Source: Auanema rhodensis
Taxonomy: Eukaryota; Animalia; Nematoda
Direction of reading: 5' to 3'
DNA: 64,000 nucleotides
NCBI GenBank assembly: GCA_964057225.1
Contig: OZ059896.1
Coordinates: 16,306,001-16,370,000 of the forward strand
The position numbers were made by a program, and so were the translations under genes. This document shows positions 742 to 26,153 of this stretch, piece after piece. Position 1 is the stretch's first letter. The number at the start of each line of letters is the position of its first letter. The notes below the pieces were generated by a model. The model did not search any database, had not been told where the DNA came from, and was given only the letters and a program-made list of their open reading frames with translations.

Positions 742-860
742 GCTTACGACCATACCACGTTGAAAATACGCCATCCCGTCCGATCTGGCAAGTCAAGCAA
801 CGTTGGGCCCGGTTAGTACTTGGATCGGAGACGGCTTGGGAATCCCGGGTGCCGTAAGCT
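742..860 (+). rRNA. 5S rRNA (copy 1)
   Basis: GCTTACGACCATACCACGTTG...AGTACTTGGATCGGAGAC...GTAAGCT followed by an oligo-T Pol III terminator; near-identical to nematode 5S. Confidence 0.98.
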
Positions 861-961
861 TTTTCTTTTTCTCACTTTCTCATCTAGTTTGTAATCAGTA
901 GTTACCTATATGGTATACGGTTATCTGGAAATGTTTTCATTTTCCGAGACAATTCTTAGAC

Positions 962-1102
962 AGCTTTGCGCAGTGGCGATAACGTGACCAATGAGGCTTT
1001 GCCGAGGTGCGTTTATTGCTGGTTGAAAACTTTTCCCAATTACCCGCGATATTCCCTGAAACATGGGTGATATACGCAATTTTTGAATGCCTGATAAGGC
1101 TG
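962..1102 (+). ncRNA. U4 spliceosomal snRNA (copy 1)
   Basis: AGCTTTGCGCAGTGGC 5' end (U6 stem II), k-turn stem-loop, TGCTGGTTGAAAACTTTTCCCAAT, Sm site AATTTTTGA, 3' hairpin GCCT-GATA-AGGC. Confidence 0.96.
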
Positions 1103-1212
1103 AATGGCATATTATGGAAGAATGTTCCACGTGAAAAGACGTCAATTTTCAAAATCAAACTAAAACGAACGGTTGCACTGCATACATATTCTGAAAAGAA
1201 AGGTAAGCATTC

Positions 1213-1331
1213 GCTTACGACCATACCACGTTGAAAGTACGCCATCCCGTCCGATCTGGCAAGTCAAGCAACGTTGGGCCCGGTTAGTACTTGGATCGGA
1301 GACGGCTTGGGAATCCCGGGTGCCGTAAGCT
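1213..1331 (+). rRNA. 5S rRNA (copy 2)
   Basis: Full 119-nt copy with oligo-T terminator. Confidence 0.98.
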
Positions 1332-1432
1332 TTTTCTTTTTCTCACTTTCTCATCTAGTTTGTAATCAGTAGTTACCTATATGGTATACGGTTATCTGGA
1401 AATGTTTTCATTTTCCGAGACAATTCTTAGAC

Positions 1433-1573
1433 AGCTTTGCGCAGTGGCGATAACGTGACCAATGAGGCTTTGCCGAGGTGCGTTAATTGCTGGTTGAAAA
1501 CTTTTCCCAATTACCCGCGATATTCCCTGAAACATGGGTGATATACGCAATTTTTGAATGCCTGATAAGGCTG
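1433..1573 (+). ncRNA. U4 snRNA (copy 2)
   Basis: Full copy; variant GCGTTAATTGC. Confidence 0.95.
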
Positions 1574-1683
1574 AATGGCATATTATGGAAGAATGTTCCA
1601 CGTGAAAAGACGTCAATTTTCAAAATCAAACTAGAACGAACGGTTGCACTGCATACATATTCTGAAAAGAAAGGTAAGCATTC

Positions 1684-1802
1684 GCTTACGACCATACCAC
1701 GTTGAAAGTACGCCATCCCGTCCGATCTGGCAAGTCAAGCAACGTTGGGCCCGGTTAGTACTTGGATCGGAGACGGCTTGGGAATCCCGGGTGCCGTAAG
1801 CT
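1684..1802 (+). rRNA. 5S rRNA (copy 3)
   Basis: Full copy. Confidence 0.98.
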
Positions 1803-1903
1803 TTTTCTTTTTCTCACTTTCTCATCTAGTTTGTAATCAGTAGTTACCTATATGGTATACGGTTATCTGGAAATGTTTTCATTTTCCGAGGCAATTCTTA
1901 GAC

Positions 1904-2044
1904 AGCTTTGCGCAGTGGCGATAACGTGACCAATGAGGCTTTGCCGAGGTGCGTTTATTGCTGGTTGAAAACTTTTCCCAATTACCCGCGATATTCCCTG
2001 AAACATGGGTGATATACGCAATTTTTGAATGCCTGATAAGGCTG
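1904..2044 (+). ncRNA. U4 snRNA (copy 3)
   Basis: Full copy. Confidence 0.95.
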
Positions 2045-2082
2045 ATTTGCATATTATGGAAGAATGTTCCACGTGAAAAGAC

Positions 2083-2421
2083 CGTTCCATATTGGTTCCT
2101 AGGGTTCCGGCTAGGTAACCATATGGACTTTAATAGTGTGAATGCCTTTGTAAAAGTAACAGAGAGTAGAGAAAAAGAAGTTTATTCAGAATATGGAAAT
2201 ACAATTATAAAAGCAAAATACAATAATCAAATAAATGAAACTACATGTTATGAGAAAGCCAACCTAGTTGCTTTCTCAGGGGTTTATATAGAAAAATATT
2301 AATTACAAATATAATTGAATTTATACAAAAAGTAGTTCAGGTCTAGTTTCTTATTGAATTCCATTAACCAAAAGTCGGTTGACGTTGTCAACCGCCTTCT
2401 TTATAAGACACGTATGGAACA
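2083..2421 (-). repeat. 3' LTR of the gag-only element
   Basis: Direct repeat of 5535-5873; termini CGTTCCATA...TATGGAACA on + strand. Confidence 0.95.
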
Positions 2422-2664
2422 TGCCTTATATTGAAAAAGTAGCTGACCTCAGCTATAAGAAATTAGACTTTTTTAGGAAAAGAAACAAAAGAGAAAAAAA
2501 TATATATATATATAAATGAATTAGAATTGGAATACTAGAATAGGAATAATAGTGTAATAGGAATAATATAAAAAAAAAAATGAAAACAATATAAAAAGAA
2601 AAAAGAAAAGAAATGAAAAGAAAAGAAAAGAAAAGAAAAACTCTGAATTCACCTCGTGCAGCTG

Positions 2665-2901
2665 TTATCCTTCTTCCTCCTCGATTTGTCCCAGCTGGAA
2701 GTCTGTCGCGGGTTGCCGGTCGGCGACCGTCCATATGTGGAACAGGCTGACGTCTGTCAGCAGTTCCGTCGCCTGGCCTGCTATCATCATTTTCTTTCTT
2801 TTCTGGTCCGGAGTGGTGGCGCGCGTCGCCATTAGTATCCTTAAGGCCTGGCTGATCAGGTCTCCCGCCTTCCTAATCGACTGGTTAGTCGATTCCATCA
2901 T
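2665..2901 (-). CDS. 78-aa small ORF overlapping the gag stop codon (unknown function)
   Basis: ATG overlaps the gag TGA (GTA-TGA-TG); basic KRKK patch and acidic tail; no recognised homology. Confidence 0.4.
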   Translation of the reverse strand: MMESTNQSIRKAGDLISQALRILMATRATTPDQKRKKMMIAGQATELLTDVSLFHIWTVADRQPATDFQLGQIEEEEG

Positions 2902-4403
2902 ACTTTCTTCTGTCCAGCTCTTGTGGATCTCTTCCTTCTGCTATCATATCGATCGTTTCCTCTGCTGTTGTATCGATCATTGTATCTATCGTACCGTTGG
3001 GGGCTACGATAATTGTTGTATCCTCGTTGATATCCATTGTTTCTGTTATCCTGTCTGAAGTTGTGACGGTTATTTTGTCGATCCTCTTGGTATCTTGGTG
3101 AGCGGTATCCTTCTCTTCTTTGATTCCATTGCTCTTGTGGGTGTTGTGGTCTTGATTGATTTCCATAGAATGTTCTTGATTGGTGTGTTTGTGATCCGTC
3201 ATAGATTTTCTCCTGTTGTGATGCTCTCATGTGGTTTATGAGACCGTTATTAATCTCTAGTTGTTCCACGTCTTTAATCAAGTTGTTGACCAAGAGCGAA
3301 GGATCCTCGTCAGCTTCCACAGTTTCGGCAATAGTCACGGCTGCATCAAAGGTGATAGGGCTGCGGTTATTGACATGTGTTCTTAAAGTCTTTCGTAGTC
3401 CTCCTAAGAATGAAACTCGTAGTATTCTTTCATCGGCTGTCGAGTCCATGTTGCATGATTCATAGGCAAGGTTTCTGCAGCGTTGAGCGAAATTTTGTAC
3501 CGTTTCGTGCTCTCCTTGTTTCAAATGAGTGAGTTTTGTGAATGCTGCATCTCTCTTTTCTGGAGGTTGTAATTTCTCCGATAGTATGCGTTTGACGTGG
3601 TTCCATCCCTGGCGTAAGTCTTCTGCTGGTATAGTTCGAAGAGCTTCAGCGGCTCTATCCGTTCCGAGAAGTAGATAGAGATGGGAAAGTCTCTCGGCAA
3701 TAGGGACTTGAAGGGCATCGAAATATCCTTCTAGTCTTTGCATGTAGAGGTTGAATGGAACCGATCCATCATAAAGCGTAGGTTTGTGATGGCGAATAGA
3801 AACGTTGTGGGCTCTTGCAATAGGAGAGTTGTCTTGCTCCATCTGCTCTGCCATTTGAGGGCGACTTCTCTGCTCTGTAACATTCGAAGTCAAATTTACG
3901 TTATTGTCTGACGAAGAAGAGACAGGAGACAGAGAGTGCCCGTGCAAAGATTGATCAGTGGAAGAGGGAGAGTTTCTAGGAATAGGAGAGGTGAGGATTT
4001 CCGCATTTGCGGTTTGAACAAGGCGTTGAGGAGAAGTGTGATTTGGAGGACAAGTGTTAGTGCCGGTATTAACAACTGTTTTTGGAGAGTGAGAAGAGCG
4101 TTTGGGCGTGGATTTACTGGATGATGCTTTATTCTTATTCAAGCTAATTGCATGCCTAGTAGTTTTAATAGCAGTAGTATAAAGTTTCTTAGCAGTTAGC
4201 GGTGTACCCGGAATAGGGGGTAATTTCTTTGATTTCGCGTTCGTTTTCGGATATTTCGCATCTGGTCGGAATGCATCCGGTGGTCCTCTTTTTCTTTGGT
4301 TTCTATGCAGTGCTGCTTCCACTGTCTGAGTTTTCTCTGCGCTATTCGTAGCATTTTGGGCAATATTTCCCGGCGGAGGGTTTTGATTCGCTGCGTCAGC
4401 CAT
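2898..4403 (-). CDS. Ty3/gypsy Gag (501 aa): disordered N-terminus, capsid domain, R/N/Y-rich C-terminus without zinc knuckle
   Basis: PTLYDGS...LKQGEHETVQNFAQRCRNLA...FLGGL...TFDAAVTIA capsid motifs; ATG in AAAG-ATG-G context 13 nt after a TTCCAG acceptor. Confidence 0.92.
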   Translation of the reverse strand: MADAANQNPPPGNIAQNATNSAEKTQTVEAALHRNQRKRGPPDAFRPDAKYPKTNAKSKKLPPIPGTPLTAKKLYTTAIKTTRHAISLNKNKASSSKSTPKRSSHSPKTVVNTGTNTCPPNHTSPQRLVQTANAEILTSPIPRNSPSSTDQSLHGHSLSPVSSSSDNNVNLTSNVTEQRSRPQMAEQMEQDNSPIARAHNVSIRHHKPTLYDGSVPFNLYMQRLEGYFDALQVPIAERLSHLYLLLGTDRAAEALRTIPAEDLRQGWNHVKRILSEKLQPPEKRDAAFTKLTHLKQGEHETVQNFAQRCRNLAYESCNMDSTADERILRVSFLGGLRKTLRTHVNNRSPITFDAAVTIAETVEADEDPSLLVNNLIKDVEQLEINNGLINHMRASQQEKIYDGSQTHQSRTFYGNQSRPQHPQEQWNQRREGYRSPRYQEDRQNNRHNFRQDNRNNGYQRGYNNYRSPQRYDRYNDRYNSRGNDRYDSRRKRSTRAGQKKV

Positions 4404-5515
4404 CTTTGTTGGTTTCCTGGAAGGAAATTATTAATCAACGAAGACTGAGCTTAAATTATACAAAACGTAAGAGACAATATGGGGTTGGTATGCGCGACTC
4501 CTGTTCCTGTCAGGGGGCCAGCCTGCAGCGGGTCTCTAGTCGGAGAATAGCCTGGTCAGGTTCATACACGAGTCCGCAACTACGTGTGACCTTTAGCAAA
4601 GGACCAAGTTCTTATCTCTCGAAGAGGCATGAGATATGAGACAGTGGTCTGTGTATTGCTCCTTTTCAGTCATGGACAAGATCAGGTACACAGGCTTCTC
4701 ATACTCACTTTTCCAGACTTCTCTTACCTAAGCAAACCCCCAAAAGACGTTCCCTTTTAACCTTACTTCTGTTCCCCTGGGTCTTGCTAGGTGGGACCAC
4801 TCAACTTCAAAATATTCTTTAATTCTCATATGGGACCAAAAAGGGTTAATTTCAAATGATTGCGCGTCTTATATCAAAAAGTGTACGCCTCCGCGCGATG
4901 TCCCGAGAATGTCTGGTATTGTTTCTTACGGGGCTTTCTCATAAAAATGCGTTAGATATCAAGAATAGTGGTTTTGTTTATGAATCAATGTTTTCAGAAT
5001 GATTTATGAATAGATTTTCAAAATTAGCTTGTGATAAGAAGTTTTCAAGATGACTTATGGGTAAGTGTTGCAATATGAATAAATGTCTTTAAGATATTTC
5101 ATGAATTGATAGTTTTTAATATTATTCGTGGTTAAATATTTTGATATGCTTGTTCCAAAAAGAGTTTTTATGCATTATATGCTTTAAACATACAGGAAAG
5201 TAGAGGAATAAAGTAGGAATATAGATTGTAATAGATAATATGTGTAAGACATTTTTTTTTTTTCAAATAGATATATCAGAAATGATGTTAGAAGAATGAT
5301 ATTTAGAGATAAATTCGAATTACTAGATTAAATTGAAGTTTTTGTTTTAGATACAAAATTGACTTGAAAGTTTGAAATATAAAATTTAATTAGAATTTTT
5401 GGATATGAAATCAAGATAAATTTTTAGAGTAAAAAGGATTTCAAAGAAAGAGAAAGTAATTTAAAGGTGAGAAAAGTAGCGGCAATGGTCCATAGAGATT
5501 CGTCCCTTATAGACG

Positions 5516-5534
5516 AATCTCGGTGGAACCTCCA
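5516..5534 (-). other. Primer-binding site complementary to the tRNA-Gln 3' end
   Basis: + strand AATCTCGGTGGAACCTCCA equals the 3' end of metazoan tRNA-Gln plus CCA, directly adjacent to the 5' LTR. Confidence 0.88.
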
Positions 5535-5873
5535 CGTTCCATATTGGTTCCTAGGGTTCCGGCTAGGTAACCATATGGACTTTAATAGTGTGAATGCCAT
5601 TGTAAAAGTAACAGAGAGTAGAGAAAAAGAAGTTTATTCAGAATATGGAAATACAATTATAAAAGCAAAATACAATAATCAAATAAATGAAACTACATGT
5701 TATGAGAAAGCCAACCTAGTTGCTTTCTCAGGGGTTTATATAGAAAAATATTAATTACAAATATAATTGAATTTATACAAAAAGTAGTTCAGGTCTAGTT
5801 TCTTATTGAATTCCATTAACCAAAAGTCGGTTGACGTTGTCAACCGCCTTCTTTATAAGACACGTATGGAACA
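5535..5873 (-). repeat. 5' LTR of the gag-only element
   Basis: Direct repeat of 2083-2421. Confidence 0.95.
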
Positions 5874-5949
5874 AGACGTCAATTTTCAAAATCAAACTAG
5901 AACGAACGGTTGCACTGCATACATATTCTGAAAAGAAAGGTAAGCATTC

Positions 5950-6068
5950 GCTTACGACCATACCACGTTGAAAGTACGCCATCCCGTCCGATCTGGCAAG
6001 TCAAGCAACGTTGGGCCCGGTTAGTACTTGGATCGGAGACGGCTTGGGAATCCCGGGTGCCGTAAGCT
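5950..6068 (+). rRNA. 5S rRNA (copy 4)
   Basis: Full copy. Confidence 0.98.
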
Positions 6069-6169
6069 TTTTCTTTTTCTCACTTTCTCATCTAGTTTGT
6101 AATCAGTAGCTACCTATAGGGTATACGGTTATCTGGAAATGTTTTCATTTTTCGAGACAATTCTTAGAC

Positions 6170-6310
6170 AGCTTTGCGCAGTGGCGATAACGTGACCAAT
6201 GAGGCTTTGCCGAGGTGCGTTTATTGCTGGTTGAAAACTTTTCCCAATTACCCGCGATATTCCCTGAAACATGGGTGATATACGCAATTTTTGAATGCCT
6301 GATAAGGCTG
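6170..6310 (+). ncRNA. U4 snRNA (copy 4)
   Basis: Full copy. Confidence 0.95.
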
Positions 6311-6420
6311 ATTTGCATATTATGGAAGAATGTTCCACGTGAAAAGACGTCAATTTTCAAAATCAAACTAAAACGAACGGTTGCACTGCATACATATTCT
6401 GAAAAGAAAGGTAAGCATTC

Positions 6421-6539
6421 GCTTACGACCATACCACGTTGAAAGTACGCCATCCCGTCCGATCTGGCAAGTCAAGCAACGTTGGGCCCGGTTAGTACTT
6501 GGATCGGAGACGGCTTGGGAATCCCGGGTGCCGTAAGCT
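6421..6539 (+). rRNA. 5S rRNA (copy 5)
   Basis: Full copy. Confidence 0.98.
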
Positions 6540-6640
6540 TTTTCTTTTTCTCACTTTCTCATCTAGTTTGTAATCAGTAGTTACCTATATGGTATACGGT
6601 TATCTGGAAATGTTTTCATTTTCCGAGACAATTCTTAGAC

Positions 6641-6781
6641 AGCTTTGCGCAGTGGCGATAACGTGACCAATGAGGCTTTGCCGAGGTGCGTTTATTGCTG
6701 GTTGAAAACTTTTCCCAATTACCCGCGATATTCCCTGAAACATGGGTGATATACGCAATTTTTGAATGCCTGATAAGGCTG
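6641..6781 (+). ncRNA. U4 snRNA (copy 5)
   Basis: Full copy. Confidence 0.95.
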
Positions 6782-6891
6782 ATTTGCATATTATGGAAAA
6801 ATGTTCCACGTGAAAAGACGTCAATTTTCAAAATCAAACTAAAACGAACGGTTGCACTGCATACATATTCTGAAAAGAAAGGTAAGCATTC

Positions 6892-7010
6892 GCTTACGAC
6901 CATACCACGTTGAAAGTACGCCATCCCGTCCGATCTGGCAAGTCAAGCAACGTTGGGCCCGGTTAGTACTTGGATCGGAGACGGCTTGGGAATCCCGGGT
7001 GCCGTAAGCT
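6892..7010 (+). rRNA. 5S rRNA (copy 6)
   Basis: Full copy. Confidence 0.98.
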
Positions 7011-7111
7011 TTTTCTTTTTCTCACTTTCTCATCTAGTTTGTAATCAGTAGTTACCTATATGGTATACGGTTATCTGGAAATGTTTTCATTTTCCGAGAC
7101 AATTCTTAGAC

Positions 7112-7252
7112 AGCTTTGCGCAGTGGCGATAACGTGACCAATGAGGCTTTGCCGAGGTGCGTTTATTGCTGGTTGAAAACTTTTCCCAATTACCCGCGAT
7201 ATTCCCTGAAACATGGGTGATATACGCAATTTTTGAATGCCTGATAAGGCTG
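7112..7252 (+). ncRNA. U4 snRNA (copy 6)
   Basis: Full copy. Confidence 0.95.
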
Positions 7253-7362
7253 ATTTGCATATTATGGAAGAATGTTCCACGTGAAAAGACGTCAATTTTC
7301 AAAATCAAACTAGAACGAACGGTTGCACTGCATACATATTCTGAAAAGAAAGGTAAGCATTA

Positions 7363-7481: not shown

Positions 7482-7582
7482 TTTTCTTTTTCTCATTTTC
7501 TCATAAAGTTTGTAATCAGTAGTTACCTATAGGGTATACGGTTAACTAGAAATGTTTTCATTTTCCGAGACAATTCTTAGAC

Positions 7583-17200: not shown

Positions 17201-19952
17201 GGTACTGTGGTAAGAGAATGTAATTGCCAGTTGTGGTGTGGAAGATTGGCTGTTTAAAACAAGAAGATATTTGCTTCGGTATCTCTTTTTGATCGATTAC
17301 AAGGGCTGATTGAGTGGTTGGTAACAGAATAATGCCGTCTCCAATTATCACATCATATTCACTCATGTCGATATAGTTGCATCGATATTCATAAGGCTGT
17401 TTCTCCCATATGATGATTGAGGTATCTGATGCACATTCTCCATGATGCGCTAAGCATCCTTCAGTATTTAGTATTAAATTGGAGATTATAGTTTCATCTG
17501 GCATCCGTGTCATAACCCCTCTTTCGATAACCAATCTGGCTTTCTCTTCACATAGCTCATTATTAAAAGATCGGCCTGGCGAGAAGGAAGGCTCGTCAGT
17601 TGCATATGTTATGCTGTCGATCTTCTTTAATTCACTCCAATTCCATCTTCTATCTCTCACTGCCAGTCTGCATTCTGCAGCTGGTATCTTTTCAATTCTC
17701 GCTATCGTTGTATTGGTATCTCTAAGGAACAAAAGGTCTCTGATACACATTTTATGAATTTCTTTGGAGCATCTCCATGCATCCCATTCATGTGCCGTTT
17801 GATTCCTTGTATAAAGATGAACTTTTGTTCGTAAGATATGCTTTATTGGTGGTAATAAGCATTTTCGGAGAGATGGGGGACGGAGAAGGGCTCCTCCAGT
17901 AGCTTTAGTACATAGCTGGTATGCTTCAGCTGTTGTAACCAGTGATAAGATTACTGATAAAGCTACGGCTAAAGTCAAAGGAGATATCAGAGTCAAATTA
18001 TTGACTCTTGAGCCTCTACCTCTGCCTCTATTGTTGTTATTTCCCCTAAAGGTACTGTTATTTCTCTGTCTATTATTGCTCATTTCTTGATTTTGTGATG
18101 CATTATGGCTTCTTTGATACCCATTTTGATTTTGATTCTGATAATTTCGACCGCGGTCACCAAAATTGCGGTTCCTAGCAAATGGGTTTTGGAAATTCCA
18201 GCCTTTTTGATTTTTTGAAAATTTATGATAATTTTGATTGTTTTGAAAGTTTGGATGATAATTGTTATAATTATTATAATTTTGATAATTTTTATTATTA
18301 AAAGATTGATAACCTCTTGCCATACCTCTCCCACCATTGTTTCTGCGCGGGGGGAAAGTTCTTTCAATTGCGTTAACCAATAGCGCCTGAGGGTCTGCTA
18401 CTTGGTTTGCAATTGATTCCTCCCAGCGAGCACTATCAACAGCCTCAGCAAAAGTTTTGGGTTTTGCTCGAATTACCCCTGGGCGTATCGTATTTTTCAA
18501 GCCTCTCAAAAATGTGGACCTCAGAATGTGATCTTTATGAGTATCACTATTAGAGAAAGCATTTAAGCTGAGGTTTCTTAACGTTTGTGCAAAACCATCA
18601 ATTGATAAATCGCCTTGAGTGCTGTTTTGAAGTGTGATAAGGGCAGGGTCTTGATTGTATTCGGGACACAGCTTGGATGTTAACTCTTCTATTAGGGTAA
18701 CCCAAGGTCCAGCAGTTCTGACCTTGTCAGGTAGCTCTAAATAAGCTTCCTCTGCTCTATCATTTTTCAATAGTAATGGTAAAATAGTTAGTCTTTCGGG
18801 CATCACTAAGCCTAAGGCGTTAGAAAAGGTATTAAACTTTGCCACGAAATCTCTAAAGTTACGACTTCCGTCGTATATGGGGCAATAAGGTGAGCTTAAT
18901 GCGTGCGCAATGGTAGATTTACCAGCTCCCGGAAGACGTGGTGTCTCCGTCATGGTTGGTATATCCTCAGGGTATGTGCGAGATGACGTAATCCCTTTAC
19001 TGCCTGAGCTTCTCGCCGTTAAATTCTTACCTCCCTTTTTCGAGTTACCAGATGTTGGATAACTAATGGTAGGGGCGGCTGAGGAGAACCGCTTCCCTGG
19101 GAGTTTGATAATTCGACTCGTTGCCTGAGGCGTCGAATGTATTGATACGCTTGAGCTGGGTATAGCGCTATCTGACTTATTAAGGGTTGGGTTGGAGGAT
19201 ACGTGAAGAGAGTTATCAACTTGTTCTGTTGTTACCTCCCCTGGAGACAAATTCAAAACTTTTATTAAGCGAGCTGTTAAAGATTTCTTACTTTTGAACT
19301 TATCAGTAGTTAGTGATAAGGGCAAAACTTCGGTAATTTCCTGATTTGGTTCTACGGGATTATTAGAGGTTGAGCGCCTACGCGGTGTATTAGTTTTTCT
19401 TTTATTAATTTTTTTAGAATCAAGCTTTTTCGAATCAAGCTTATCAGTGATAACTGATAAGGGTGATTTGCGAATAGTGAGAGATGAGGTTTTATTAAGT
19501 TGTGAGTTTTCTATCGGAGTGGAAAATGCCTGCGGTGTTAGAGTTAGTTCAAAAGAAGATGCAAGATCGTTATCAGTATTAACTGATAAAGTTGATAAGT
19601 TTAGGTGGGGAGTGGCTGGTGAAGTATTAGAGGTTATTTGTTTTGGTTTTTGAATTTTTTGAATCTTTTTATTACTTTTAAAAGAGTGTACCTTTGGAGT
19701 TGAAGCTGAAGTTTGAATATTGTAGTCCTGAATATAGAAATCAGGGTCCTCCTCGGTGTTGTCCGGAGGTGAATACGTGCCTTCTCGAGGAATGAAGGTT
19801 TTCTCGACTTTGGGTTTTACCTCTTGTTCAGGCTCTTCAATCTGAACACTGAGGAGTCGAGTGCGGCTTCTGGTTCGACTGGCGACTGCGATGTCGTCAC
19901 TGGACTCAGAAGGGTATAGAGCAGGGACGGCCGAAGAGTATCTTCGTGCCAC
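11247..19952 (-). CDS. Gag-Env-Pol polyprotein (2901 aa from GTG; first ATG at 18953)
   Basis: Capsid motifs (PIYDGS...QGDLSIDGFAQTL...FLRGL); hydrophobic signal ~17922-17997; Cys-rich gB-like ectodomain; TM ~15120-15200; protease LWDSGS (~14862-14870); RT MPMGL and YLDD (~13539-13550); RNase H (ESDGS, EIEALG, TDHRPL); integrase HHCC plus DVMGP/TDRGS/VERLHR; GPY/F-like GPCEV. Confidence 0.96.
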   Translation of the reverse strand: MARRYSSAVPALYPSESSDDIAVASRTRSRTRLLSVQIEEPEQEVKPKVEKTFIPREGTYSPPDNTEEDPDFYIQDYNIQTSASTPKVHSFKSNKKIQKIQKPKQITSNTSPATPHLNLSTLSVNTDNDLASSFELTLTPQAFSTPIENSQLNKTSSLTIRKSPLSVITDKLDSKKLDSKKINKRKTNTPRRRSTSNNPVEPNQEITEVLPLSLTTDKFKSKKSLTARLIKVLNLSPGEVTTEQVDNSLHVSSNPTLNKSDSAIPSSSVSIHSTPQATSRIIKLPGKRFSSAAPTISYPTSGNSKKGGKNLTARSSGSKGITSSRTYPEDIPTMTETPRLPGAGKSTIAHALSSPYCPIYDGSRNFRDFVAKFNTFSNALGLVMPERLTILPLLLKNDRAEEAYLELPDKVRTAGPWVTLIEELTSKLCPEYNQDPALITLQNSTQGDLSIDGFAQTLRNLSLNAFSNSDTHKDHILRSTFLRGLKNTIRPGVIRAKPKTFAEAVDSARWEESIANQVADPQALLVNAIERTFPPRRNNGGRGMARGYQSFNNKNYQNYNNYNNYHPNFQNNQNYHKFSKNQKGWNFQNPFARNRNFGDRGRNYQNQNQNGYQRSHNASQNQEMSNNRQRNNSTFRGNNNNRGRGRGSRVNNLTLISPLTLAVALSVILSLVTTAEAYQLCTKATGGALLRPPSLRKCLLPPIKHILRTKVHLYTRNQTAHEWDAWRCSKEIHKMCIRDLLFLRDTNTTIARIEKIPAAECRLAVRDRRWNWSELKKIDSITYATDEPSFSPGRSFNNELCEEKARLVIERGVMTRMPDETIISNLILNTEGCLAHHGECASDTSIIIWEKQPYEYRCNYIDMSEYDVIIGDGIILLPTTQSALVIDQKEIPKQISSCFKQPIFHTTTGNYILLPQYPNDTNIHVLIEREYKKLPAKRDKRAIAECTVELNKEWIQKQEDFETLILNICPYPFLRPVMSNPGIYQIIPLIKARRAVNPSYSIIDWVSAHPEKFYFFLRSPVSDKSIQRFLQTYEIHDPEEAILYFLAQKELAATTRGAIRYLTSQQLLEQIGDRLTAHEFDEKLLEKDGSYRERAESIAMELAYTPVIFENNLSVPSRQEVLKSFVNMPPIRPTLTTDNADERIVLRNTLYLYHNLMTLRVIRPNKTAAAVDDEKFRQLTINVPDTNKLYRDKDSNYGISIGPHPRIQNPSADTRQLLIKTFLPLLEDIETPPYLTRRLSLTTTTDKPASLVQETTKSHTTRIPTTTTVETTTAAITTTLSPTTLATVTDTASRILRKQRTSSPPVETREIQAQATYTASKVNNEIQFNLNVSRRIAQDHLQYTTTLIQEELQKHFMESYESICEIQNRYLELWRSILHIEPTIAMRTILGREDIAARFVGSDIVHVHICLPLQPKAVYHNHKINDTCYLETPVITEDERLYFAAPGSRDLLTHGKEIDCEHVPTDVYYQNGEWININGSVEVKPISLFDKAQYHQLTPLKFTGANLYTNLSLRVYSMSTAIAYGASLASIRQNHVLHTIHNDPKITSAFNLLKKGSDYISKAAEFTTSAWTSVKQFLIGSIERTLIFIGSMVTIAAVLIILFVVAKFWFFRATPLTVMHVHEIDNEPPSYEETLELVSRPDQQMPDNIMKQYYPALVTFIPIAIPFVASIVSAETKLPLIYISVEDKLILALWDSGSSVSYVRLSTLKYLNMAENVKKRHLVAMAANKSTFTFYGKINLVIEIAGYEIEHTFLVSNDHDCPAPALIGLDFMKALDSENIDVSLKPSKKRLEIGNNAIPLIGNESIKHTEITVNIINLRTKTLKPDEEAPIPIKTDKPLESNEVVVLGDSGSALKSLYPTAFRDTSGVYVMFRNNTDETIAMEANSVIGQAIIGEIPACEPFKHKPILPYVPPEADWESKLPYFPRDFIKDLDLENADLTKEEKHELTKIIESHREAFLNEDRKIGLFKGPIEHTIPLRTDMDMPKPRITRIPLGKQEEIEKQVKEMLEQGIIEPSTSLFNSPVVLVKKKDDTYRFVTDFRALNNVTRKQTYVIPSISDIVDLAAGAQFFSNFDLVSGFFQISLRKSDRPLTAFTTTSGTYQYKRMPMGLCGAPHTFQTAVRYLQSKCSCKLFVYLDDLLVISDTREQHLKDIDDLLQAVEELGMKIKLKKCAFAQPEVKFLGLIVGRQGIKPDPQKVAAIQDYPAPKNATGVRAFLGMVGFFRKFMKDFARIASPLYDLTKADTEFKWENKHQEALDLLKRSLIQAPVLSPPKSDRLFIVESDGSNIAIGAVLLQPEDPKQPLKNLHPIAFASRKLVKAERNYAPIEIEALGLVYALNQFRTYILGTHTICITDHRPLTSLMTRRDLFGRLAKFQLVIQEYDIEIKYRAGQLNKVCDALSRYIGEEANDAKPETKKKKMEEIHINAINTPTIKEIQLSTPWIKRTIAEIEYRAQKNMTANDRYCVINDLLYTKPTDKKPQPAIVIPQEHPIIEEIIKVFHEDPTIAAHQGIIKTKEAILRRFYWTNMQNDITIFIKNCIKCAQRKKDPHSMTVQPIGHFEIPSKPFERVHMDVMGPFPPSKRNCTYVITMQDAFTKWSTTIAVPQITTEITIDRFLRHFVYIFGPPHRLITDRGSNFVSKKFEEMCTKLGIKHEPTLPHQKNSNGQVERLHRTLEEGLTHYLKEDLSDWDTVLPKITFAINNIQHATTGIAPYIALFGKECRMSMDAELPETITKIQEISEELLQRRPDMDKRDEIIKNRIAKNQENAKKKKDRTQRAHHRDIQPGDMVMTTIKSHQIGQKLRKSYDGPCEVINVEGSKVQIRNSSGKLQDIHKDNLKIFSPASQNISYNTRARFRESQAEEDSDIEIIEVINRNNKDSIDTEPEDENEDEIWLPRNEEE

Positions 19953-20365
19953 TTTGGAATCACTCTTGGTTCGGAAAAACCGCGAGTGTTTCGTTATATG
20001 GGGGATGTTGACGTTGAATGAGTGACAAGAAATTCGGGTCGGTTATAGGAAAAGTAAGAAACGTTTGAAGATTGAGACGTGGCGTCTTTCGCCGAGAATC
20101 GTTATTAGATGAGAAAGAGTTTTAAAATCTTGGCCTGAGATCTGGCTCCGCCTATCTACCGTATTCTCTTTTCTTTATTCTATTTCACAGATGTTCATCA
20201 ATTATAAATTTTTTTTGGTCTTCGCTCTTTCTAGCCTCAATCTTAATACTTTACTCTAATTGAATTCTTGAAAGTATGAGAGAGATTTTCAGTCGTTTTA
20301 TGTCCCCTTTTTATGCATAAGAATCTTTATATTTGTAGAGCTGAAAAAAAAAAATAAATCAAAGA

Positions 20366-20899
20366 ATGGCTTATGAAGGTCTATCGGGAATGACTTTTGT
20401 CTTGAGGAAGCTGTACGCTGACCTCGTCTTGTATGATCAAGACGAAGTGTTAGCTTATAGGCCGCACCCAGACATAATTAAGATGGTTGGTTAAAACAAA
20501 GAAACATGTTATCTTAATAAGAATTTTTAGTTTATTGAGGATTTAAAGATGCATTATCTGGGAAGGGGATTAGTAAACTTCTCCCTAATGCAGGAAATAG
20601 CGGATGAGGTTGCAGCTATCCGGCGATGGTGCCTCACCGACTTGTGCGCGCATTGGTATGAAAACCCAAATCTGGTCGCATCCCCTTGGAATTGGTATGA
20701 GCATAAGTCTCATGATTTTTATGATTATATGTCTAAAATTTTGTTTAAAATTTATTTATTTTATGAACAGTCTCCTATGGGCTTATTGCTAAGGACCTCT
20801 GCGGATTCGGTGTATTCGCAGTATTTAGAGCCTAGCGATGAGCCCATCTCACAGCCTATAGAATTTGTGAGACAGTTGCATTTTAAATGGGGCTTTTAA
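20366..20899 (+). CDS. Antisense two-exon accessory gene inside the gypsy element (exons 20366-20485 and 20531-20899; 162 aa, unknown function)
   Basis: AGA-ATG-G start; 40 codons; 45-nt GTTGGT...TTTTTAG phase-0 intron that removes an in-frame stop; exon 2 in frame with the 116-aa ORF; AATAAA at 20916-20921. Confidence 0.65.
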
Positions 20900-21869
20900 C
20901 AATTGTTTCATATATAATAAATACTTAATTTCACTCATTTGTTCTCTCTCTCTTTTTTTTTTTTTTCCATAACACAAACTTTGGTCGAGCTTATTAATAA
21001 AGAAGGAGTGCGTGCGCCTTGGGAAAATGGCTCATGTGCACGTTATTATTAAAAGCCGTGGGCGATTCTTTTTCGGAATGATTTTGGCATGCTAATGAGA
21101 TTCCGAGAATATTTAAAAAGATTGCTCATTTTACTAATGGACTGAGACCAAAGCTCGTTTATAAAACGCAATTTTTTTCTTTAAACCATTCTACTAATTT
21201 ATAGAATATTACAATATGAATACTACGGTAGGTGTGTGGGAATATCTTATGATGTTAGCAACAAAAATGAGCTGAGGAAGGTGACACATTCTACGGAGAA
21301 GAAAACATCCGTAGCCCATGTGCTTTCGCCAAAATGACCTGACAGGCAATAAAATTTGTGCCAGGATTTTTCGGACTAGTGTGGTCTATTCTCACAATCA
21401 AAAAAAAAATAAAAACCGAATAACGGCTCCCGCAAAAATATTTAGTTAGCATGCTCTTTTACGCCTGAATTTAACTTTCAAATCTCTAGTCCTGACCACA
21501 ATAAAATATTAAACTTTGTGCGCTTTCAAAATTTCATTCTAACTCCTCGTTGCCAAATAATAATGTAATCAAAATTTCGTTTGGTGAAATTGTCCCCTAT
21601 TTCGATCCAAACGTCCTCAAAAAAAAATGCAAGAGAAGCGGTGCAGGATACGGTATTATAAGGGTGGACACTCAGACGGTTTTATGAGTGGGGACAGCGG
21701 GTGAAATTTCAAAATTATGTAGTCCTAGCTCTCTAAAAGAGAGATCCCTTGTACCTGCACCTTATACAAGTTGGCGCCCTCATTATGTTGCTAACCGTGG
21801 AGGAAGTTTTAATTTAGATATCAAAATATGGACTTTTTATGCGAGTTTTTGCGACAAAAATGAGTTCGA

Positions 21870-21882
21870 GGTGGAACCTCCA
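21870..21882 (-). other. Primer-binding site (tRNA-Gln 3' end, 13 nt)
   Basis: + strand GGTGGAACCTCCA adjacent to the 5' LTR. Confidence 0.85.
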
Positions 21883-22248
21883 CGTTCCATTATGCTCCTA
21901 CGTATATTGAACAGACCATTGTAGTCTGCTCAACTACGCGTATAGTATTCCATAAGTGTAGCGGTATGGAAACAGAGCATAAGGATTACATAAGATAAGG
22001 AAATATATAGGTTTATTATACACAATACAATATCATTACAATACATTAACACAAGGATAAAGTAAACTACATTTACAAGACAAAGACTAATATATAAGAT
22101 TAACTAAGTTAGATGCAAACCGTCCATGGGCTTGCAAAGGGGCGAACTCCCGAATAGGGGCATGAGGGAAGGCGGTGCCATTCCTCATTCCTCTAGTCGG
22201 TCTGGCTCTAACCCTGCAGTTACATATATAGAGTCTCCGAATGGAACG
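21883..22248 (-). repeat. 5' LTR of the gag-env-pol element
   Basis: Direct repeat of 10175-10540. Confidence 0.96.
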
Positions 22249-22266
22249 AAAGAAAGGTAAGCATTC

Positions 22267-22385
22267 GCTTACGACCATACCACGTTGAAAGTACGCCATC
22301 CCGTCCGATCTGGCAAGTCAAGCAACGTTGGGCCCGGTTAGTACTTGGATCGGAGACGGCTTGGGAATCCCGGGTGCCGTAAGCT
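22267..22385 (+). rRNA. 5S rRNA (copy 13)
   Basis: Full copy; sequence upstream of -18 replaced by the LTR. Confidence 0.97.
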
Positions 22386-22486
22386 TTTTCTTTTTCTCAC
22401 TTTCTCATCTAGTTTGTAATCAGTAGTTACCTATATGGTATACGGTTATCTGGAAATGTTTTCATTTTCCGAGACAATTCTTAGAC

Positions 22487-22627
22487 AGCTTTGCGCAGTG
22501 GCGATAACGTGACCAATGAGGCTTTGCCGAGGTGCGTTTATTGCTGGTTGAAAACTTTTCCCAATTACCCGCGATATTCCCTGAAACATGGGTGATATAC
22601 GCAATTTTTGAATGCCTGATAAGGCTG
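22487..22627 (+). ncRNA. U4 snRNA (copy 13)
   Basis: Full copy. Confidence 0.95.
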
Positions 22628-22737
22628 ATTTGCATATTATGGAAGAATGTTCCACGTGAAAAGACGTCAATTTTCAAAATCAAACTAAAACGAACGGTTG
22701 CACTGCATACATATTCTGAAAAGAGAGGTAAGCATTC

Positions 22738-22856
22738 GCTTACGACCATACCACGTTGAAAGTACGCCATCCCGTCCGATCTGGCAAGTCGAGCAACGTT
22801 GGGCCCGGTTAGTACTTGGATCGGAGACGGCTTGGGAATCCCGGGTGCCGTAAGCT
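22738..22856 (+). rRNA. 5S rRNA (copy 14)
   Basis: Full copy; box A variant AGTCGAGC. Confidence 0.97.
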
Positions 22857-22957
22857 TTTTCTTTTTCTCACTTTCTCATCTAGTTTGTAATCAGTAGTTA
22901 CCTATATGGTATACGGTTATCTGGAAATGTTTTCATTTTCCGAGACAATTCTTAGAC

Positions 22958-23098
22958 AGCTTTGCGCAGTGGCGATAACGTGACCAATGAGGCTTTGCCG
23001 AGGTGCGTTTATTGCTGGTTGAAAACTTTTCCCAATTACCCGCGATATTCCCTGAAACATGGGTGATATACGCAATTTTTGAATGCCTGATAAGGCTG
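22958..23098 (+). ncRNA. U4 snRNA (copy 14)
   Basis: Full copy. Confidence 0.95.
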
Positions 23099-23208
23099 AT
23101 TTGCATATTATGGAAGAATGTTCCACGTGAAAAGACGTCAATTTTCAAAATCAAACTAGAACGAACGGTTGCACTGCATACATATTCTGAAAAGAAAGGT
23201 AAGCATTC

Positions 23209-23327
23209 GCTTACGACCATACCACGTTGAAAATACGCCATCCCGTCCGATCTGGCAAGTCAAGCAACGTTGGGCCCGGTTAGTACTTGGATCGGAGACG
23301 GCTTGGGAATCCCGGGTGCCGTAAGCT
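23209..23327 (+). rRNA. 5S rRNA (copy 15)
   Basis: Full copy. Confidence 0.98.
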
Positions 23328-23428
23328 TTTTCTTTTTCTCACTTTCTCATCTAGTTTGTAATCAGTAGTTACCTATATGGTATACGGTTATCTGGAAATG
23401 TTTTCATTTTCCGAGACAATTCTTAGAC

Positions 23429-23569
23429 AGCTTTGCGCAGTGGCGATAACGTGACCAATGAGGCTTTGCCGAGGTGCGTTTATTGCTGGTTGAAAACTTT
23501 TCCCAATTACCCGCGGTATTCCCTGAAACATGGGTGATATACGCAATTTTTGAATGCCTGATAAGGCTG
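23429..23569 (+). ncRNA. U4 snRNA (copy 15)
   Basis: Full copy; one A>G change (CCGCGGTAT). Confidence 0.95.
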
Positions 23570-23679
23570 ATTTGCATATTATGGAAGAATGTTCCACGTG
23601 AAAAGACGTCAATTTTCAAAATCAAACTAAAACGAACGGTTGCACTGCATACATATTCTGAAAAGAAAGGTAAGCATTC

Positions 23680-23798
23680 GCTTACGACCATACCACGTTG
23701 AAAGTACGCCATCCCGTCCGATCTGGCAAGTCAAGCAACGTTGGGCCCGGTTAGTACTTGGATCGGAGACGGCTTGGGAATCCCGGGTGCCGTAAGCT
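23680..23798 (+). rRNA. 5S rRNA (copy 16)
   Basis: Full copy. Confidence 0.98.
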
Positions 23799-23899
23799 TT
23801 TTCTTTTTCTCACTTTCTCATCTAGTTTGTAATCAGTAGTTACCTATATGGTATACGGTTATCTGGAAATGTTTTCATTTTCCGAGACAATTCTTAGAC

Positions 23900-24040
23900 A
23901 GCTTTGCGCAGTGGCGATAACGTGACCAATGAGGCTTTGCCGAGGTGCGTTTATTGCTGGTTGAAAACTTTTCCCAATTACCCGCGATATTCCCTGAAAC
24001 ATGGGTGATATACGCAATTTTTGAATGCCTGATAAGGCTG
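23900..24040 (+). ncRNA. U4 snRNA (copy 16)
   Basis: Full copy. Confidence 0.95.
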
Positions 24041-24150
24041 ATTTGCATATTATGGAAGAATGTTCCACGTGAAAAGACGTCAATTTTCAAAATCAAACTA
24101 AAACGAACGGTTGCACTGCATACATATTCCGAAAAGAAAGGTAAGCATTC

Positions 24151-24269
24151 GCTTACGACCATACCACGTTGAAAGTACGCCATCCCGTCCGATCTGGCAA
24201 GTCAAGCAACGTTGGGCCCGGTTAGTACTTGGATCGGAGACGGCTTGGGAATCCCGGGTGCCGTAAGCT
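24151..24269 (+). rRNA. 5S rRNA (copy 17)
   Basis: Full copy. Confidence 0.98.
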
Positions 24270-24370
24270 TTTTCTTTTTCTCATTTTCTCATCTAGTTTG
24301 TAATCAGTAGTTACCTATATGGTATACGGTTAACTAGAAATGTTTTCATTTTCCGAGACAATTCTTAGAC

Positions 24371-24511
24371 AGCTTTGCGCAGTGGCGATAACGTGACCAA
24401 TGAGGCTTTGCCGAGGTGCGTTTATTGCTGGTTGAAAACTTTTCCCAATTACCCGCGATATTCCCTGAAACATGGGTGATATACGCAATTTTTGAATGCC
24501 TGATAAGGCTG
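24371..24511 (+). ncRNA. U4 snRNA (copy 17)
   Basis: Full copy. Confidence 0.95.
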
Positions 24512-24621
24512 ATTTGCATATTATGGAAGAATGTTCCACGTGAAAAGACGTCAATTTTCAAAATCAAACTAGAACGAACGGTTGCACTGCATACATATTC
24601 TGAAAAGAAAGGTAAGCATTC

Positions 24622-24740
24622 CCTTACGACCATACCACGTTGAAAATACGCCATCCCGTCCGATCTGGCAAGTCAAGCAACGTTGGGCCCGGTTAGTACT
24701 TGGATCGGAGACGGCTTGGGAATCCCGGGTGCCGTAAGCT
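24622..24740 (+). rRNA. 5S rRNA (copy 18; G+1>C variant)
   Basis: Full-length but begins CCTTACGAC. Confidence 0.93.
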
Positions 24741-24841
24741 TTTTCTTTTTCTCATTTTCTCATAAAGTTTGTAATCAGTAGTTACCTATAGGGTATACGG
24801 TTAACTAGAAATGTTTTCATTTTCCGAGACAATTCTTAGAC

Positions 24842-24982
24842 AGCTTTGCGCAGTGGCGATAACGTGACCAATGAGGCTTTGCCGAGGTGCGTTTATTGCT
24901 GGTTGAAAACTTTTCCCAATTACCCGCGATATTCCCTGAAACATGGGTGATATACGCAATTTTTGAATGCCTGAAAAGGCTG
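24842..24982 (+). ncRNA. U4 snRNA (copy 18)
   Basis: Full copy; 3' hairpin loop variant GAAA. Confidence 0.95.
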
Positions 24983-25092
24983 ATTTGCATATTATGGAAG
25001 AATGTTCCACGTGAAAAGACGTCAATTTTCAAAATCTAACTAAAACGAACGGTTGCACTGCATACATATTCCGAAAAGAAAGGTAAGCATTC

Positions 25093-25211
25093 GCTTACGA
25101 CCATACCACGTTGAAAGTACGCCATCCCGTCCGATCTGGCAAGTCAAGCAACGTTGGGCCCGGTTAGTACTTGGATCGGAGACGGCTTGGGAATCCCGGG
25201 TGCCGTAAGCT
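25093..25211 (+). rRNA. 5S rRNA (copy 19)
   Basis: Full copy. Confidence 0.98.
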
Positions 25212-25312
25212 TTTTCTTTTTCTCATTTTCTCATCTAGTTTGTAATCAGTAGTTACCTATATGGTATACGGTTATCTGGAAATGTTTTCATTTTCCGAGA
25301 CAATTCTTAGAC

Positions 25313-25453
25313 AGCTTTGCGCAGTGGCGATAACGTGACCAATGAGGCTTTGCCGAGGTGCGTTTATTGCTGGTTGAAAACTTTTCCCAATTACCCGCGA
25401 TATTCCCTGAAACATGGGTGATATACGCAATTTTTGAATGCCTGATAAGGCTG
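25313..25453 (+). ncRNA. U4 snRNA (copy 19)
   Basis: Full copy. Confidence 0.95.
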
Positions 25454-25563
25454 ATTTGCATATTATGGAAGAATGTTCCACGTGAAAAGACGTCAATTTT
25501 CAAAATCAAACTAGAACGAACGGTTGCACTGCATACATATTCTGAAAAGAAAGGTAAGCATTC

Positions 25564-25682
25564 GCTTACGACCATACCACGTTGAAAATACGCCATCCCG
25601 TCCGATCTGGCAAGTCAAGCAACGTTGGGCCCGGTTAGTACTTGGATCGGAGACGGCTTGGGAATCCCGGGTGCCGTAAGCT
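25564..25682 (+). rRNA. 5S rRNA (copy 20)
   Basis: Full copy. Confidence 0.98.
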
Positions 25683-25783
25683 TTTTCTTTTTCTCATTTT
25701 CTCATAAAGTTTGTAATCAGTAGTTACCTATAGGGTATACGGTTAACTAGAAATGTTTTCATTTTCCGAGACAATTCTTAGAC

Positions 25784-25924
25784 AGCTTTGCGCAGTGGCG
25801 ATAACGTGACCAATGAGGCTTTGCCGAGGTGCGTTTATTGCTGGTTGAAAACTTTTCCCAATTACCCGCGATATTCCCTGAAACATGGGTGATATACGCA
25901 ATTTTTGAATGCCTGATAAGGCTG
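25784..25924 (+). ncRNA. U4 snRNA (copy 20)
   Basis: Full copy. Confidence 0.95.
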
Positions 25925-26034
25925 ATTTGCATATTATGGAAGAATGTTCCACGTGAAAAGACGTCAATTTTCAAAATCAAACTAGAACGAACGGTTGCAC
26001 TGCATACATATTCTGAAAAGAAAGGTAAGCATTC

Positions 26035-26153
26035 GCTTACGACCATACCACGTTGAAAATACGCCATCCCGTCCGATCTGGCAAGTCAAGCAACGTTGGG
26101 CCCGGTTAGTACTTGGATCGGAGACGGCTTGGGAATCCCGGGTGCCGTAAGCT
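26035..26153 (+). rRNA. 5S rRNA (copy 21)
   Basis: Full copy. Confidence 0.98.

What the first reader, a model, noticed from the sequence alone, without database searches (positions are those of the whole stretch)
742..26153. 5S rRNA co-repeated with U4 snRNA instead of SL1
Seen: every 471-bp unit has a 5S gene and, ~100 bp after its terminator, a complete same-strand U4 gene with intact U6-pairing region, k-turn, Sm site and 3' hairpin. The SL1 exon GGTTTAATTACCCAAGTTTGAG is absent on both strands. Established: C. elegans and many other nematodes pair 5S with SL1 in a ~1-kb repeat and keep U4 in a few dispersed copies; 5S linkage to U1/U2/U5 is known in other animals. Inference: a lineage-specific swap of the 5S partner that puts U4 at 5S-like copy number (at least 20 here), with alternating Pol III and Pol II/SNAPc genes packed about 100 bp apart.
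Basis: partly seen in the sequence, partly recalled or inferred. Interest (0 to 1): 0.75.

Follow-up and report, generated by a model that had tools for sequence, protein, structure and literature searches.

The report
Tandem 5S rRNA–U4 snRNA gene array
A rhabditid nematode chromosome carries about 20 tandem 471-bp units, each holding a 5S rRNA gene and an intact-looking U4 spliceosomal RNA gene. This partner for 5S was not found described in the searchable literature, although linkage of 5S to other small-RNA genes is a familiar pattern.

Summary
Rfam finds 21 full 5S genes and 20 full-length U4 genes, all on the + strand, in a 471-bp unit. U4 starts 101 nt after the 5S gene. No SL1/SL2 gene is in the window.

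The 742-26153 span is not one unbroken array. Two young LTR retrotransposons (3.8 kb and 12.1 kb, each with a target-site duplication) split a roughly 9.7-kb array into three in-phase blocks.

Evidence that the U4 copies are real genes:
- They score like a bona fide Caenorhabditis U4.
- The k-turn loop, Sm site and 3' hairpin are intact.
- They form canonical U4/U6 stems I and II with a nematode-type U6.
- They keep the central hairpin through compensatory changes.
- They have as few variable sites as 5S.
- A weak PSE-like element sits at -58, where other nematode snRNA promoters have theirs, with no TATA box.

Expression is not shown. The host is a rhabditid nematode, species unidentified.

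"Swap with SL1" and "lineage-specific" remain untested. Metagenomic nematode-like contigs found here show a 5S-U2-U1-U5-U6-U4-U3 cluster and a U4-only tandem array beside a 5S gene. My verdict is a new variant of a known kind (5S linked to a SNAPc-type small-RNA gene), of moderate interest.

The parts
717..2082 (+). Array block 1. 5S genes at 742-860, 1213-1331 and 1684-1802. U4 genes at 962-1100, 1433-1571 and 1904-2042. The third unit is cut after unit position 399.
   Evidence: TRF; Rfam; unit comparison
2083..5872 (-). LTR retrotransposon (a), 3,790 bp, inserted in the U4-to-5S spacer 72 nt upstream of the next 5S. LTRs are 338 bp (337/338 identical). It has a gag-only 501-aa ORF at 2898-4403 and a target-site duplication AAGAC.
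5873..10174 (+). Array block 2. It resumes in phase at unit position 395. Nine 5S genes (5950 to 9718, every 471 bp) and nine U4 genes (6170 to 9938). The last unit is cut after unit position 457.
8305..8423 (+). Representative 5S rRNA gene, followed by the terminator TTTTTCTTTTTC.
   Evidence: Rfam RF00001, 107.5 bits; sequence read
8467..8488 (+). Candidate proximal sequence element (PSE) of U4, ACCTATATGGTATACGGTTATC, at -58 to -37.
   Evidence: Best-scoring position in the spacer with a PWM built from 9 foreign nematode-type PSEs. 15/22 identical in register with the U5 upstream element. The absolute PWM score is low.
8525..8663 (+). Representative U4 snRNA gene (139 nt).
   Evidence: Rfam RF00015, 117.9 bits, full model; alignment and covariation; U4/U6 cofold
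10175..22248 (-). LTR retrotransposon (b), 12,074 bp, inserted 14 nt upstream of a 5S gene. LTRs are 366 bp and 100% identical. Target-site duplication AAAG. One 2901-aa ORF (11247-19952) carries a gB-like fusion-glycoprotein domain followed by PR, RT, RNase H and IN.
22249..26277 (+). Array block 3. It resumes in phase at unit position 454. Nine 5S genes (22267 to 26035) and eight full U4 genes (22487 to 25784). It ends with U4 nt 1-23 (26255-26277).
26278..26298 (+). Degenerate copy of 5S nt 98-118 (18/21 identical) fused to the truncated U4. This is the decayed right edge of the array.
26376..26493 (-). Single U5 snRNA gene, opposite strand, about 100 nt beyond the array edge.
   Evidence: Rfam RF00020, 72.5 bits
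26528..26549 (-). Candidate PSE of U5, ACCCATATCAGATACGCTATTC, at -56 to -35.
   Evidence: Top PWM position in the 101 nt upstream of U5; second-best in 400 nt with the smaller PWM

Best explanation
This is a bipartite multigene tandem array in a rhabditid nematode. Each 471-bp unit holds a Pol III 5S rRNA gene (internal promoter, double T5 terminator). 101 nt downstream on the same strand sits a U4 snRNA gene with its own upstream PSE-type promoter, most likely SNAPc/Pol II dependent. A U4 gene was probably captured in the 5S spacer. It was then co-amplified and kept uniform with 5S by unequal crossing-over and gene conversion, so U4 rides at 5S copy number at this locus. Both genes appear functional. 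The array (about 20.6 units, 9.7 kb) was later hit by two recent LTR retrotransposon insertions. What is shown: gene content, arrangement, integrity of the RNA features, the insertions, and the array edges. What is inferred: promoter use, polymerase, expression, origin by capture, and any relation to SL1.
For: There are 20 U4 and 21 5S hits far above Rfam cut-offs, all full length. The U4 score (117.9) is comparable to a C. nigoni U4 locus (120.6). U4 has the CCAAUGAGG/CCGAGG k-turn loop, the AAUUUUUGA Sm site and a 3' hairpin. Cofolding with a nematode-type U6 gives canonical stem II (U4 3-16 with U6 57-70) and stem I (U4 57-62 with U6 48-53). Eleven pairs show compensatory changes across 7 U4s, and the window copy keeps them. 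Variable sites among units number 3/119 in 5S and 3/139 in U4, against 18/213 in the spacers (Fisher p=0.003). The PSE-like element is at -58 for U4 and -56 for the neighbouring U5. This is the same position as in 9 other nematode-type promoters. The two elements share 15/22 bases in register (4 of 5000 shuffles at that position, 81 of 5000 anywhere). There is no TATA box at -30, unlike the U6 promoter of L010. Removing each transposon plus one duplication copy restores the unit phase. This argues against misassembly.
Against: There is no expression evidence. The U4 PSE candidate scores poorly in absolute terms against foreign PSE matrices (0.85 and -5.5). Concerted evolution can keep non-functional passengers uniform, and the variable-site contrast rests on small counts. 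No 3' box could be defined. The rest of the genome is unseen, so other U4, 5S or SL1 loci are unknown.
Confidence: 0.72

Rival explanations
1. The U4 copies are passengers. A U4 gene or retro-copy landed in a 5S spacer and was amplified only because it sits inside the 5S repeat. The copies are silent or barely expressed, and functional U4 comes from dispersed loci.
For: The match of the upstream element to foreign nematode PSE matrices is weak. Array homogenisation can explain sequence uniformity without selection. Two of 20 copies carry a change at U4 nt 53, next to the U6-pairing region.
Against: All 20 copies are full length with every functional motif. Divergence from C. nigoni U4 in the central hairpin is compensatory. 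Variable sites are as depleted in U4 as in 5S relative to the spacers. The upstream element sits exactly at the canonical -58 and resembles the one upstream of the independent U5 gene. A processed retro-copy would lack any upstream promoter.
Confidence: 0.18
2. An ancestral nematode 5S-SL1 unit had its partner replaced by U4 in this lineage, so this genome has no 5S-SL1 array.
For: SL1 is absent from the window. The host belongs to the clade (Rhabditina) where C. elegans has about 110 copies of 5S-SL1 (PMC1657053, PMC11822377). The array is bounded on both sides in the window, so it may be the whole 5S locus.
Against: Orientation (same strand versus divergent), unit size (471 bp versus about 1 kb) and the absence of any SL1 remnant give no trace of descent from a 5S-SL1 unit. 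A second 5S array with SL1 elsewhere cannot be excluded. Other nematode-like contigs link 5S to many snRNA genes, so linkage to snRNA genes may be old or recurrent rather than a swap.
Confidence: 0.25
3. This is an assembly artefact. 5S and U4 repeats were wrongly joined or collapsed.
For: Tandem arrays are often misassembled, and the copy number here may be under- or over-estimated.
Against: There are 20 junctions of each kind with unit-specific variants forming two interspersed haplotypes. Two transposon insertions have clean target-site duplications that keep the phase. The array edges are unique and decayed.
Confidence: 0.03

Closest known systems
Caenorhabditis elegans 5S rDNA-SL1 tandem repeat (about 1 kb, 100-110 copies, chromosome V)
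   Same: It is a nematode 5S array in which every unit also carries one small Sm-class, PSE/SNAPc-type Pol II gene. Pol III and Pol II genes therefore alternate at high copy number (PMC11822377, PMC1657053, bioRxiv 10.64898/2026.01.07.698080).
   Different: The partner here is U4, not SL1. The genes are on the same strand, not divergent with a shared promoter region. The unit is 471 bp, not about 1 kb. About 20 copies are seen here.
5S rDNA linked to U1/U2/U5 snRNA genes in other animals (fish, crustaceans, molluscs)
   Same: It is co-repetition of 5S with a spliceosomal snRNA gene. One example, 5S-U1 in Triportheus, is listed in PMC10946416. The wider survey (Vierna et al. 2013) is known to me from memory only and could not be read.
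   Different: That is a different phylum and a different snRNA. No paper in the searchable library reports a 5S-U4 unit.
Metagenomic contig L010 (JGI 3300051518, Ga0503115_025643), found here
   Same: A nematode-type U4 lies on the same strand as a full 5S gene within 2.6 kb. PSEs sit at about -57.
   Different: That contig carries 5S, U2, U1, U5, an unidentified Sm-site RNA gene, U6, U4 and U3, once each. It is not a two-gene unit. Its organism is unknown, and tandem repetition is not shown.
U4-only tandem array, period about 552 bp, in ENA metagenome contigs L005-L009
   Same: U4 is amplified as a tandem array in a nematode-like genome. One contig (L005) has a 5S gene 183 nt from a U4.
   Different: The unit holds U4 only. 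The 5S sits at the array edge in convergent orientation. The organism is unknown.

Membership tests
U4 spliceosomal snRNA (Rfam RF00015) | Sequence-and-structure match to the covariance model above the curated threshold over the full length | tested here: met
   20 copies, 115.9-118.3 bits against cut-off 46, model positions 1-138
U4 spliceosomal snRNA (Rfam RF00015) | 5' region able to form U4/U6 stems I and II flanking the 5' stem-loop | tested here: met
   Cofold with the U6 of L004/L010 pairs U4 3-16 with U6 57-70 and U4 57-62 with U6 48-53. The U6 comes from another organism.
U4 spliceosomal snRNA (Rfam RF00015) | K-turn 5' stem-loop, Sm site between hairpins, 3' hairpin | tested here: met
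   CCAAUGAGG...CCGAGG, AAUUUUUGA and the terminal hairpin are aligned to the model. Hairpin pairs are kept through compensatory changes.
U4 spliceosomal snRNA (Rfam RF00015) | Expressed, TMG-capped, assembled into the U4/U6 snRNP | not testable with these tools
   No RNA data
5S rRNA gene (Rfam RF00001), Pol III type 1 | Full-length model match and an oligo-T terminator | tested here: met
   21 copies, 102-108 bits against cut-off 38. TTTTTCTTTTTC follows directly after the gene.
SNAPc/PSE-dependent Pol II snRNA gene (nematode type) | PSE centred near -55, matching the clade consensus (AACCCGCG...GTACG in the loci gathered here) | tested here: inconclusive
   The best spacer position is exactly -58 and resembles the window's own U5 element. 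Absolute scores against foreign matrices are low (0.85 and -5.5). The published C. elegans consensus (Thomas 1990) could not be read.
SNAPc/PSE-dependent Pol II snRNA gene (nematode type) | No TATA box at about -30 (which would mark Pol III use, as in U6) | tested here: met
   U4 -36 to -1 has no TATA. The L010 U6 has TTTATATA at about -30.
SNAPc/PSE-dependent Pol II snRNA gene (nematode type) | 3' box for Integrator-dependent end formation | tested here: inconclusive
   Only short purine-rich similarities lie downstream of the snRNA genes compared. No consensus could be defined.
Nematode 5S-SL1 repeat | SL1 RNA gene in each 5S unit | tested here: not met
   No SL1 22-mer with up to 3 mismatches. 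No SL1/SL2 family hit.
Nematode 5S-SL1 repeat | Divergent orientation with a shared promoter region, unit of about 1 kb | tested here: not met
   Same strand, 471-bp unit
5S rDNA linked to another small-RNA multigene family (general class) | A second, independent small-RNA gene in every unit of a homogenised 5S tandem array | tested here: met
   20 of 20 complete units

The most novel reading that the evidence does not exclude
In nematodes the 5S array may be a general amplification and transcription platform for SNAPc-dependent Pol II small-RNA genes. Its partner would be interchangeable over evolution: SL1 in Caenorhabditis, U4 here, and a whole snRNA set in the organism of contig L010. That would imply a functional coupling, such as a shared Pol II/Pol III nuclear compartment of the kind just described for C. 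elegans 5S-SL1, rather than chance hitch-hiking. It would also make U4 dosage in this species tied to 5S copy number.
Probability: 0.25. Interest if true: 0.65.

Novelty: new variant of a known kind. Interest (0 to 1): 0.45.

Why it matters
Linkage of 5S to other small-RNA gene families is a known theme. In nematodes the 5S-SL1 unit is now a model for how Pol II and Pol III share one gene cluster.

A natural variant offers a comparative test of that model. Here the Pol II partner is U4, on the same strand, with only 101 and 112 nt between genes. It can ask whether the coupling depends on SL1, on orientation, or simply on having a SNAPc-type gene in the unit.

It also raises a dosage question. 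U4 would be present at about 20 clustered copies, against the few dispersed copies reported for C. elegans. That C. elegans figure is from my memory of Thomas et al. 1990, which I could not read here.

Tried and rejected
- **Species identification failed.** The gag-only ORF of transposon (a) has no homologues. Exact look-ups of window ORFs found nothing. Pol of transposon (b) places the host among rhabditids only: best hits are Auanema 54-56%, Heterorhabditis 46%, then Caenorhabditis and Diploscapter.
- **Host genes.** Exons were scanned one ORF at a time by reference. The big representative-protein search was not used because the claim does not rest on a protein.
- **Antisense-ORF search.** Searching the 102-aa antisense ORF that spans U4 as a protein did recover other U4 loci.
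- **Promoter alignment.** A naive local alignment of U4, U5 and 5S upstream regions showed nothing convincing. My first idea, that the 5S upstream AACGAACGG... matched the U5 -30 region as a PSE, was dropped once real PSE positions were seen.
- **PWM from L004 alone.** It ranked the U4 -58 site only 8th in the unit.
- **Literature.** Thomas et al. 1990 and Vierna et al. 2013 are not held. Four searches found no 5S-U4 report.
- **tRNA genes.** None in the window.
- **Retroelements.** They were only described.
Full report
**What is there.** Tandem Repeats Finder reports a 471-bp period at 98-99% identity in three blocks: 717-2082, 5873-10174 and 22249-26277. Rfam at curated thresholds finds 21 5S rRNA genes (102-108 bits, cut-off 38) and 20 U4 snRNA genes (116-118 bits, cut-off 46, complete model). 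All are on the + strand. It also finds one U5 gene on the minus strand at 26376-26493, just past the array.

Unit map, counting from the first base of 5S:
- 5S: 1-119
- TTTTTCTTTTTC terminator directly after the gene
- spacer: 120-220
- U4: 221-359
- spacer: 360-471

The SL1 22-mer is absent with up to three mismatches. No SL1/SL2 family hit appears at gathering threshold, nor at E<=1 in two units.

**The span is not one array.** The segments 2083-5872 and 10175-22248 are LTR retrotransposons.
- Element (a) is 3,790 bp. Its LTRs are 338 bp (337/338 identical). It has a gag-only 501-aa ORF and a 5-bp target duplication, AAGAC.
- Element (b) is 12,074 bp. Its LTRs are 366 bp and identical. It has one 2901-aa ORF and a 4-bp duplication, AAAG.

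Removing each element plus one duplication copy restores the unit phase exactly: unit position 399 joins to 395, and 457 joins to 454. The original array was therefore about 9.7 kb, or 20.6 units. This, together with two interspersed unit haplotypes, argues strongly against misassembly.

The array is bounded inside the window. The left edge starts 25 nt upstream of the first 5S. At the right edge, U4 nt 1-23 (26255-26277) is fused to a decayed copy of 5S nt 98-118.

**Host.** Pol of element (b) is closest to proteins from Auanema (54-56%), Heterorhabditis (46%), several Caenorhabditis species and Diploscapter. The U4 is about 90% identical to a C. nigoni U4, including the variable central hairpin. 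Flanking ORFs match GT92, an M41 AAA protease, an E2 enzyme and a ThiF/Atg7-like protein.

The host is therefore a rhabditid nematode, but I could not name the species. Host exons were searched one at a time by reference. The joined, spliced-model step was left out.

**Is the U4 a real gene?**
- It scores like a bona fide Caenorhabditis U4 locus (117.9 against 120.6 bits).
- It has the k-turn loop, the Sm site and the terminal hairpin.
- Cofolded with a nematode-type U6 from contig L004/L010, it forms canonical stem II and stem I.
- Across seven U4 sequences, 11 pairs show compensatory changes, and the window copy keeps them.
- Among the units, distinct variable sites number 3/119 in 5S and 3/139 in U4, against 18/213 in the spacers (Fisher p=0.003). 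Counts are small, and concerted evolution is a caveat.

**Promoter.** I searched the 102-aa antisense ORF that happens to span U4 as a protein. This recovered U4 loci from C. nigoni, Gnathostoma and several metagenome contigs.

Their upstream regions show the nematode PSE (AACCCGCG...GTACG) starting at -56 to -59, and at -65 for U6. With a matrix built from nine such elements, none from the window, the results are:
- The best position in the 101-nt spacer upstream of U4 is -58, by a wide margin.
- The best position upstream of the window's U5 is -56.

The two window elements share 15/22 bases in register. Of 5000 shuffles, 81 reach this anywhere and 4 reach it at the PSE position. Absolute scores are low, so I call this feature inconclusive but suggestive.

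There is no TATA box at -30, unlike the U6 of L010. U4 also contains an internal T5 run. Both point to Pol II (inference).

**Comparison with other genomes.** C. nigoni and Gnathostoma U4 loci have no 5S in their flanks. Two metagenomic finds matter more.
- Contig L010 (JGI 3300051518, 2.6 kb) carries eight genes on one strand: 5S, U2, U1, U5, an unidentified PSE-driven Sm-site RNA, U6, U4 and U3.
- Contigs L005-L009 (ENA) are pieces of a U4-only tandem array with a period of about 552 bp. L005 shows a convergent 5S gene 183 nt from a U4.

Both have nematode-type U4 sequences, but their organisms are unknown. So 5S-snRNA proximity and U4 amplification are not unique to this window. The compact two-gene 5S-U4 unit is the distinctive feature here.

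**Literature.** The C. elegans background is confirmed: about 1 kb unit, about 110 copies, 5S and SL1 in opposite orientation, Pol III on 5S and Pol II on SL1 (PMC11822377, PMC1657053, bioRxiv 10.64898/2026.01.07.698080). Four full-text searches found no report of a 5S-U4 unit. The key metazoan survey (Vierna et al. 2013) and Thomas et al. 1990 are not held, so prior description cannot be excluded.

**Verdict.** This is a genuine, most likely functional, 5S-U4 bipartite tandem array in a rhabditid nematode, interrupted by two young retrotransposons. It is a new variant of the known class of 5S linked to another small-RNA gene family. The "swap with SL1" story and U4 expression remain untested. 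Interest is moderate.

**Handling of the retroelements.** The two elements were only described.

Noticed in passing
window 10175-22248 (ORF 11247-19952, minus strand): An apparently intact 12-kb LTR element with 100% identical 366-bp LTRs. Its single 2901-aa ORF has a herpesvirus-gB / Monjiviricetes class-III fusion-glycoprotein domain (aa 1338-1481) upstream of PR-RT-RNaseH-IN. The same domain order occurs in proteins from C. japonica, C. auriculariae, Diploscapter pachys and Auanema.
   Followed up: partly
window 2083-5872: A gag-only 3.8-kb LTR element whose 501-aa ORF has no detectable homologues. It shares LTR termini (CGTTCCAT / ATGGAACG) and a 13-nt primer-binding site (TGGAGGTTCCACC) with the 12-kb element. 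It is likely a non-autonomous partner mobilised by that element.
   Followed up: partly
window 2082/2083 and 10174/10175: Both retrotransposons sit in the U4-to-5S spacer, 72 and 14 nt upstream of a 5S start, both antisense to the array. This recalls the Pol III-upstream targeting of some Ty3-like elements. With only two cases, it is not distinguishable from survival bias.
   Followed up: no
L010:1-2602 (JGI 3300051518, Ga0503115_025643): A compact one-strand cluster of 5S, U2, U1, U5, U6, U4 and U3, with a PSE repeated about every 250 bp. There is an extra PSE-driven gene of about 110 nt (reverse strand, roughly 880-991) that has an AG|GT junction and an Sm site. It is SL-RNA-like or SmY-like but is not SL1, and Rfam does not recognise it.
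   Followed up: partly
L005-L009 (ENA metagenome contigs): A U4-only tandem array with a period of about 552 bp in an unidentified nematode-like organism seen in several metagenomes. L005 captures its edge next to a convergent 5S gene.
   Followed up: partly
window 26255-26298: At the right array edge, U4 nt 1-23 is joined directly to a degenerate 5S 3' end (18/21 identical). This is a deletion junction in a terminal unit that has escaped homogenisation.
   Followed up: yes
window 3-311: An open frame running off the left end encodes three Cys-rich CX2C...C knuckles typical of retroelement gag proteins. It has no Pfam hit. The array's left flank is probably another transposon remnant.
   Followed up: partly
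window 742-26153, unit positions 25, 134, 143, 144, 170, 183, 186: Two unit haplotypes are interspersed along the array. One has 5S G25 and the other has 5S A25 plus six linked spacer changes. Two of those changes fall inside the candidate U4 PSE.
   Followed up: partly
window 26900-39100: Intron-containing host genes lie beyond the array. They are a ligand-gated ion-channel-like first exon (about 26957), GT92 (30594-30890), an M41 AAA protease (32800-33180, minus strand), an E2 ubiquitin-conjugating enzyme (36080-36523) and a ThiF/Atg7-like gene (38488-39102). Long (CT)n/(AG)n microsatellites are frequent in 52-63 kb.
   Followed up: partly
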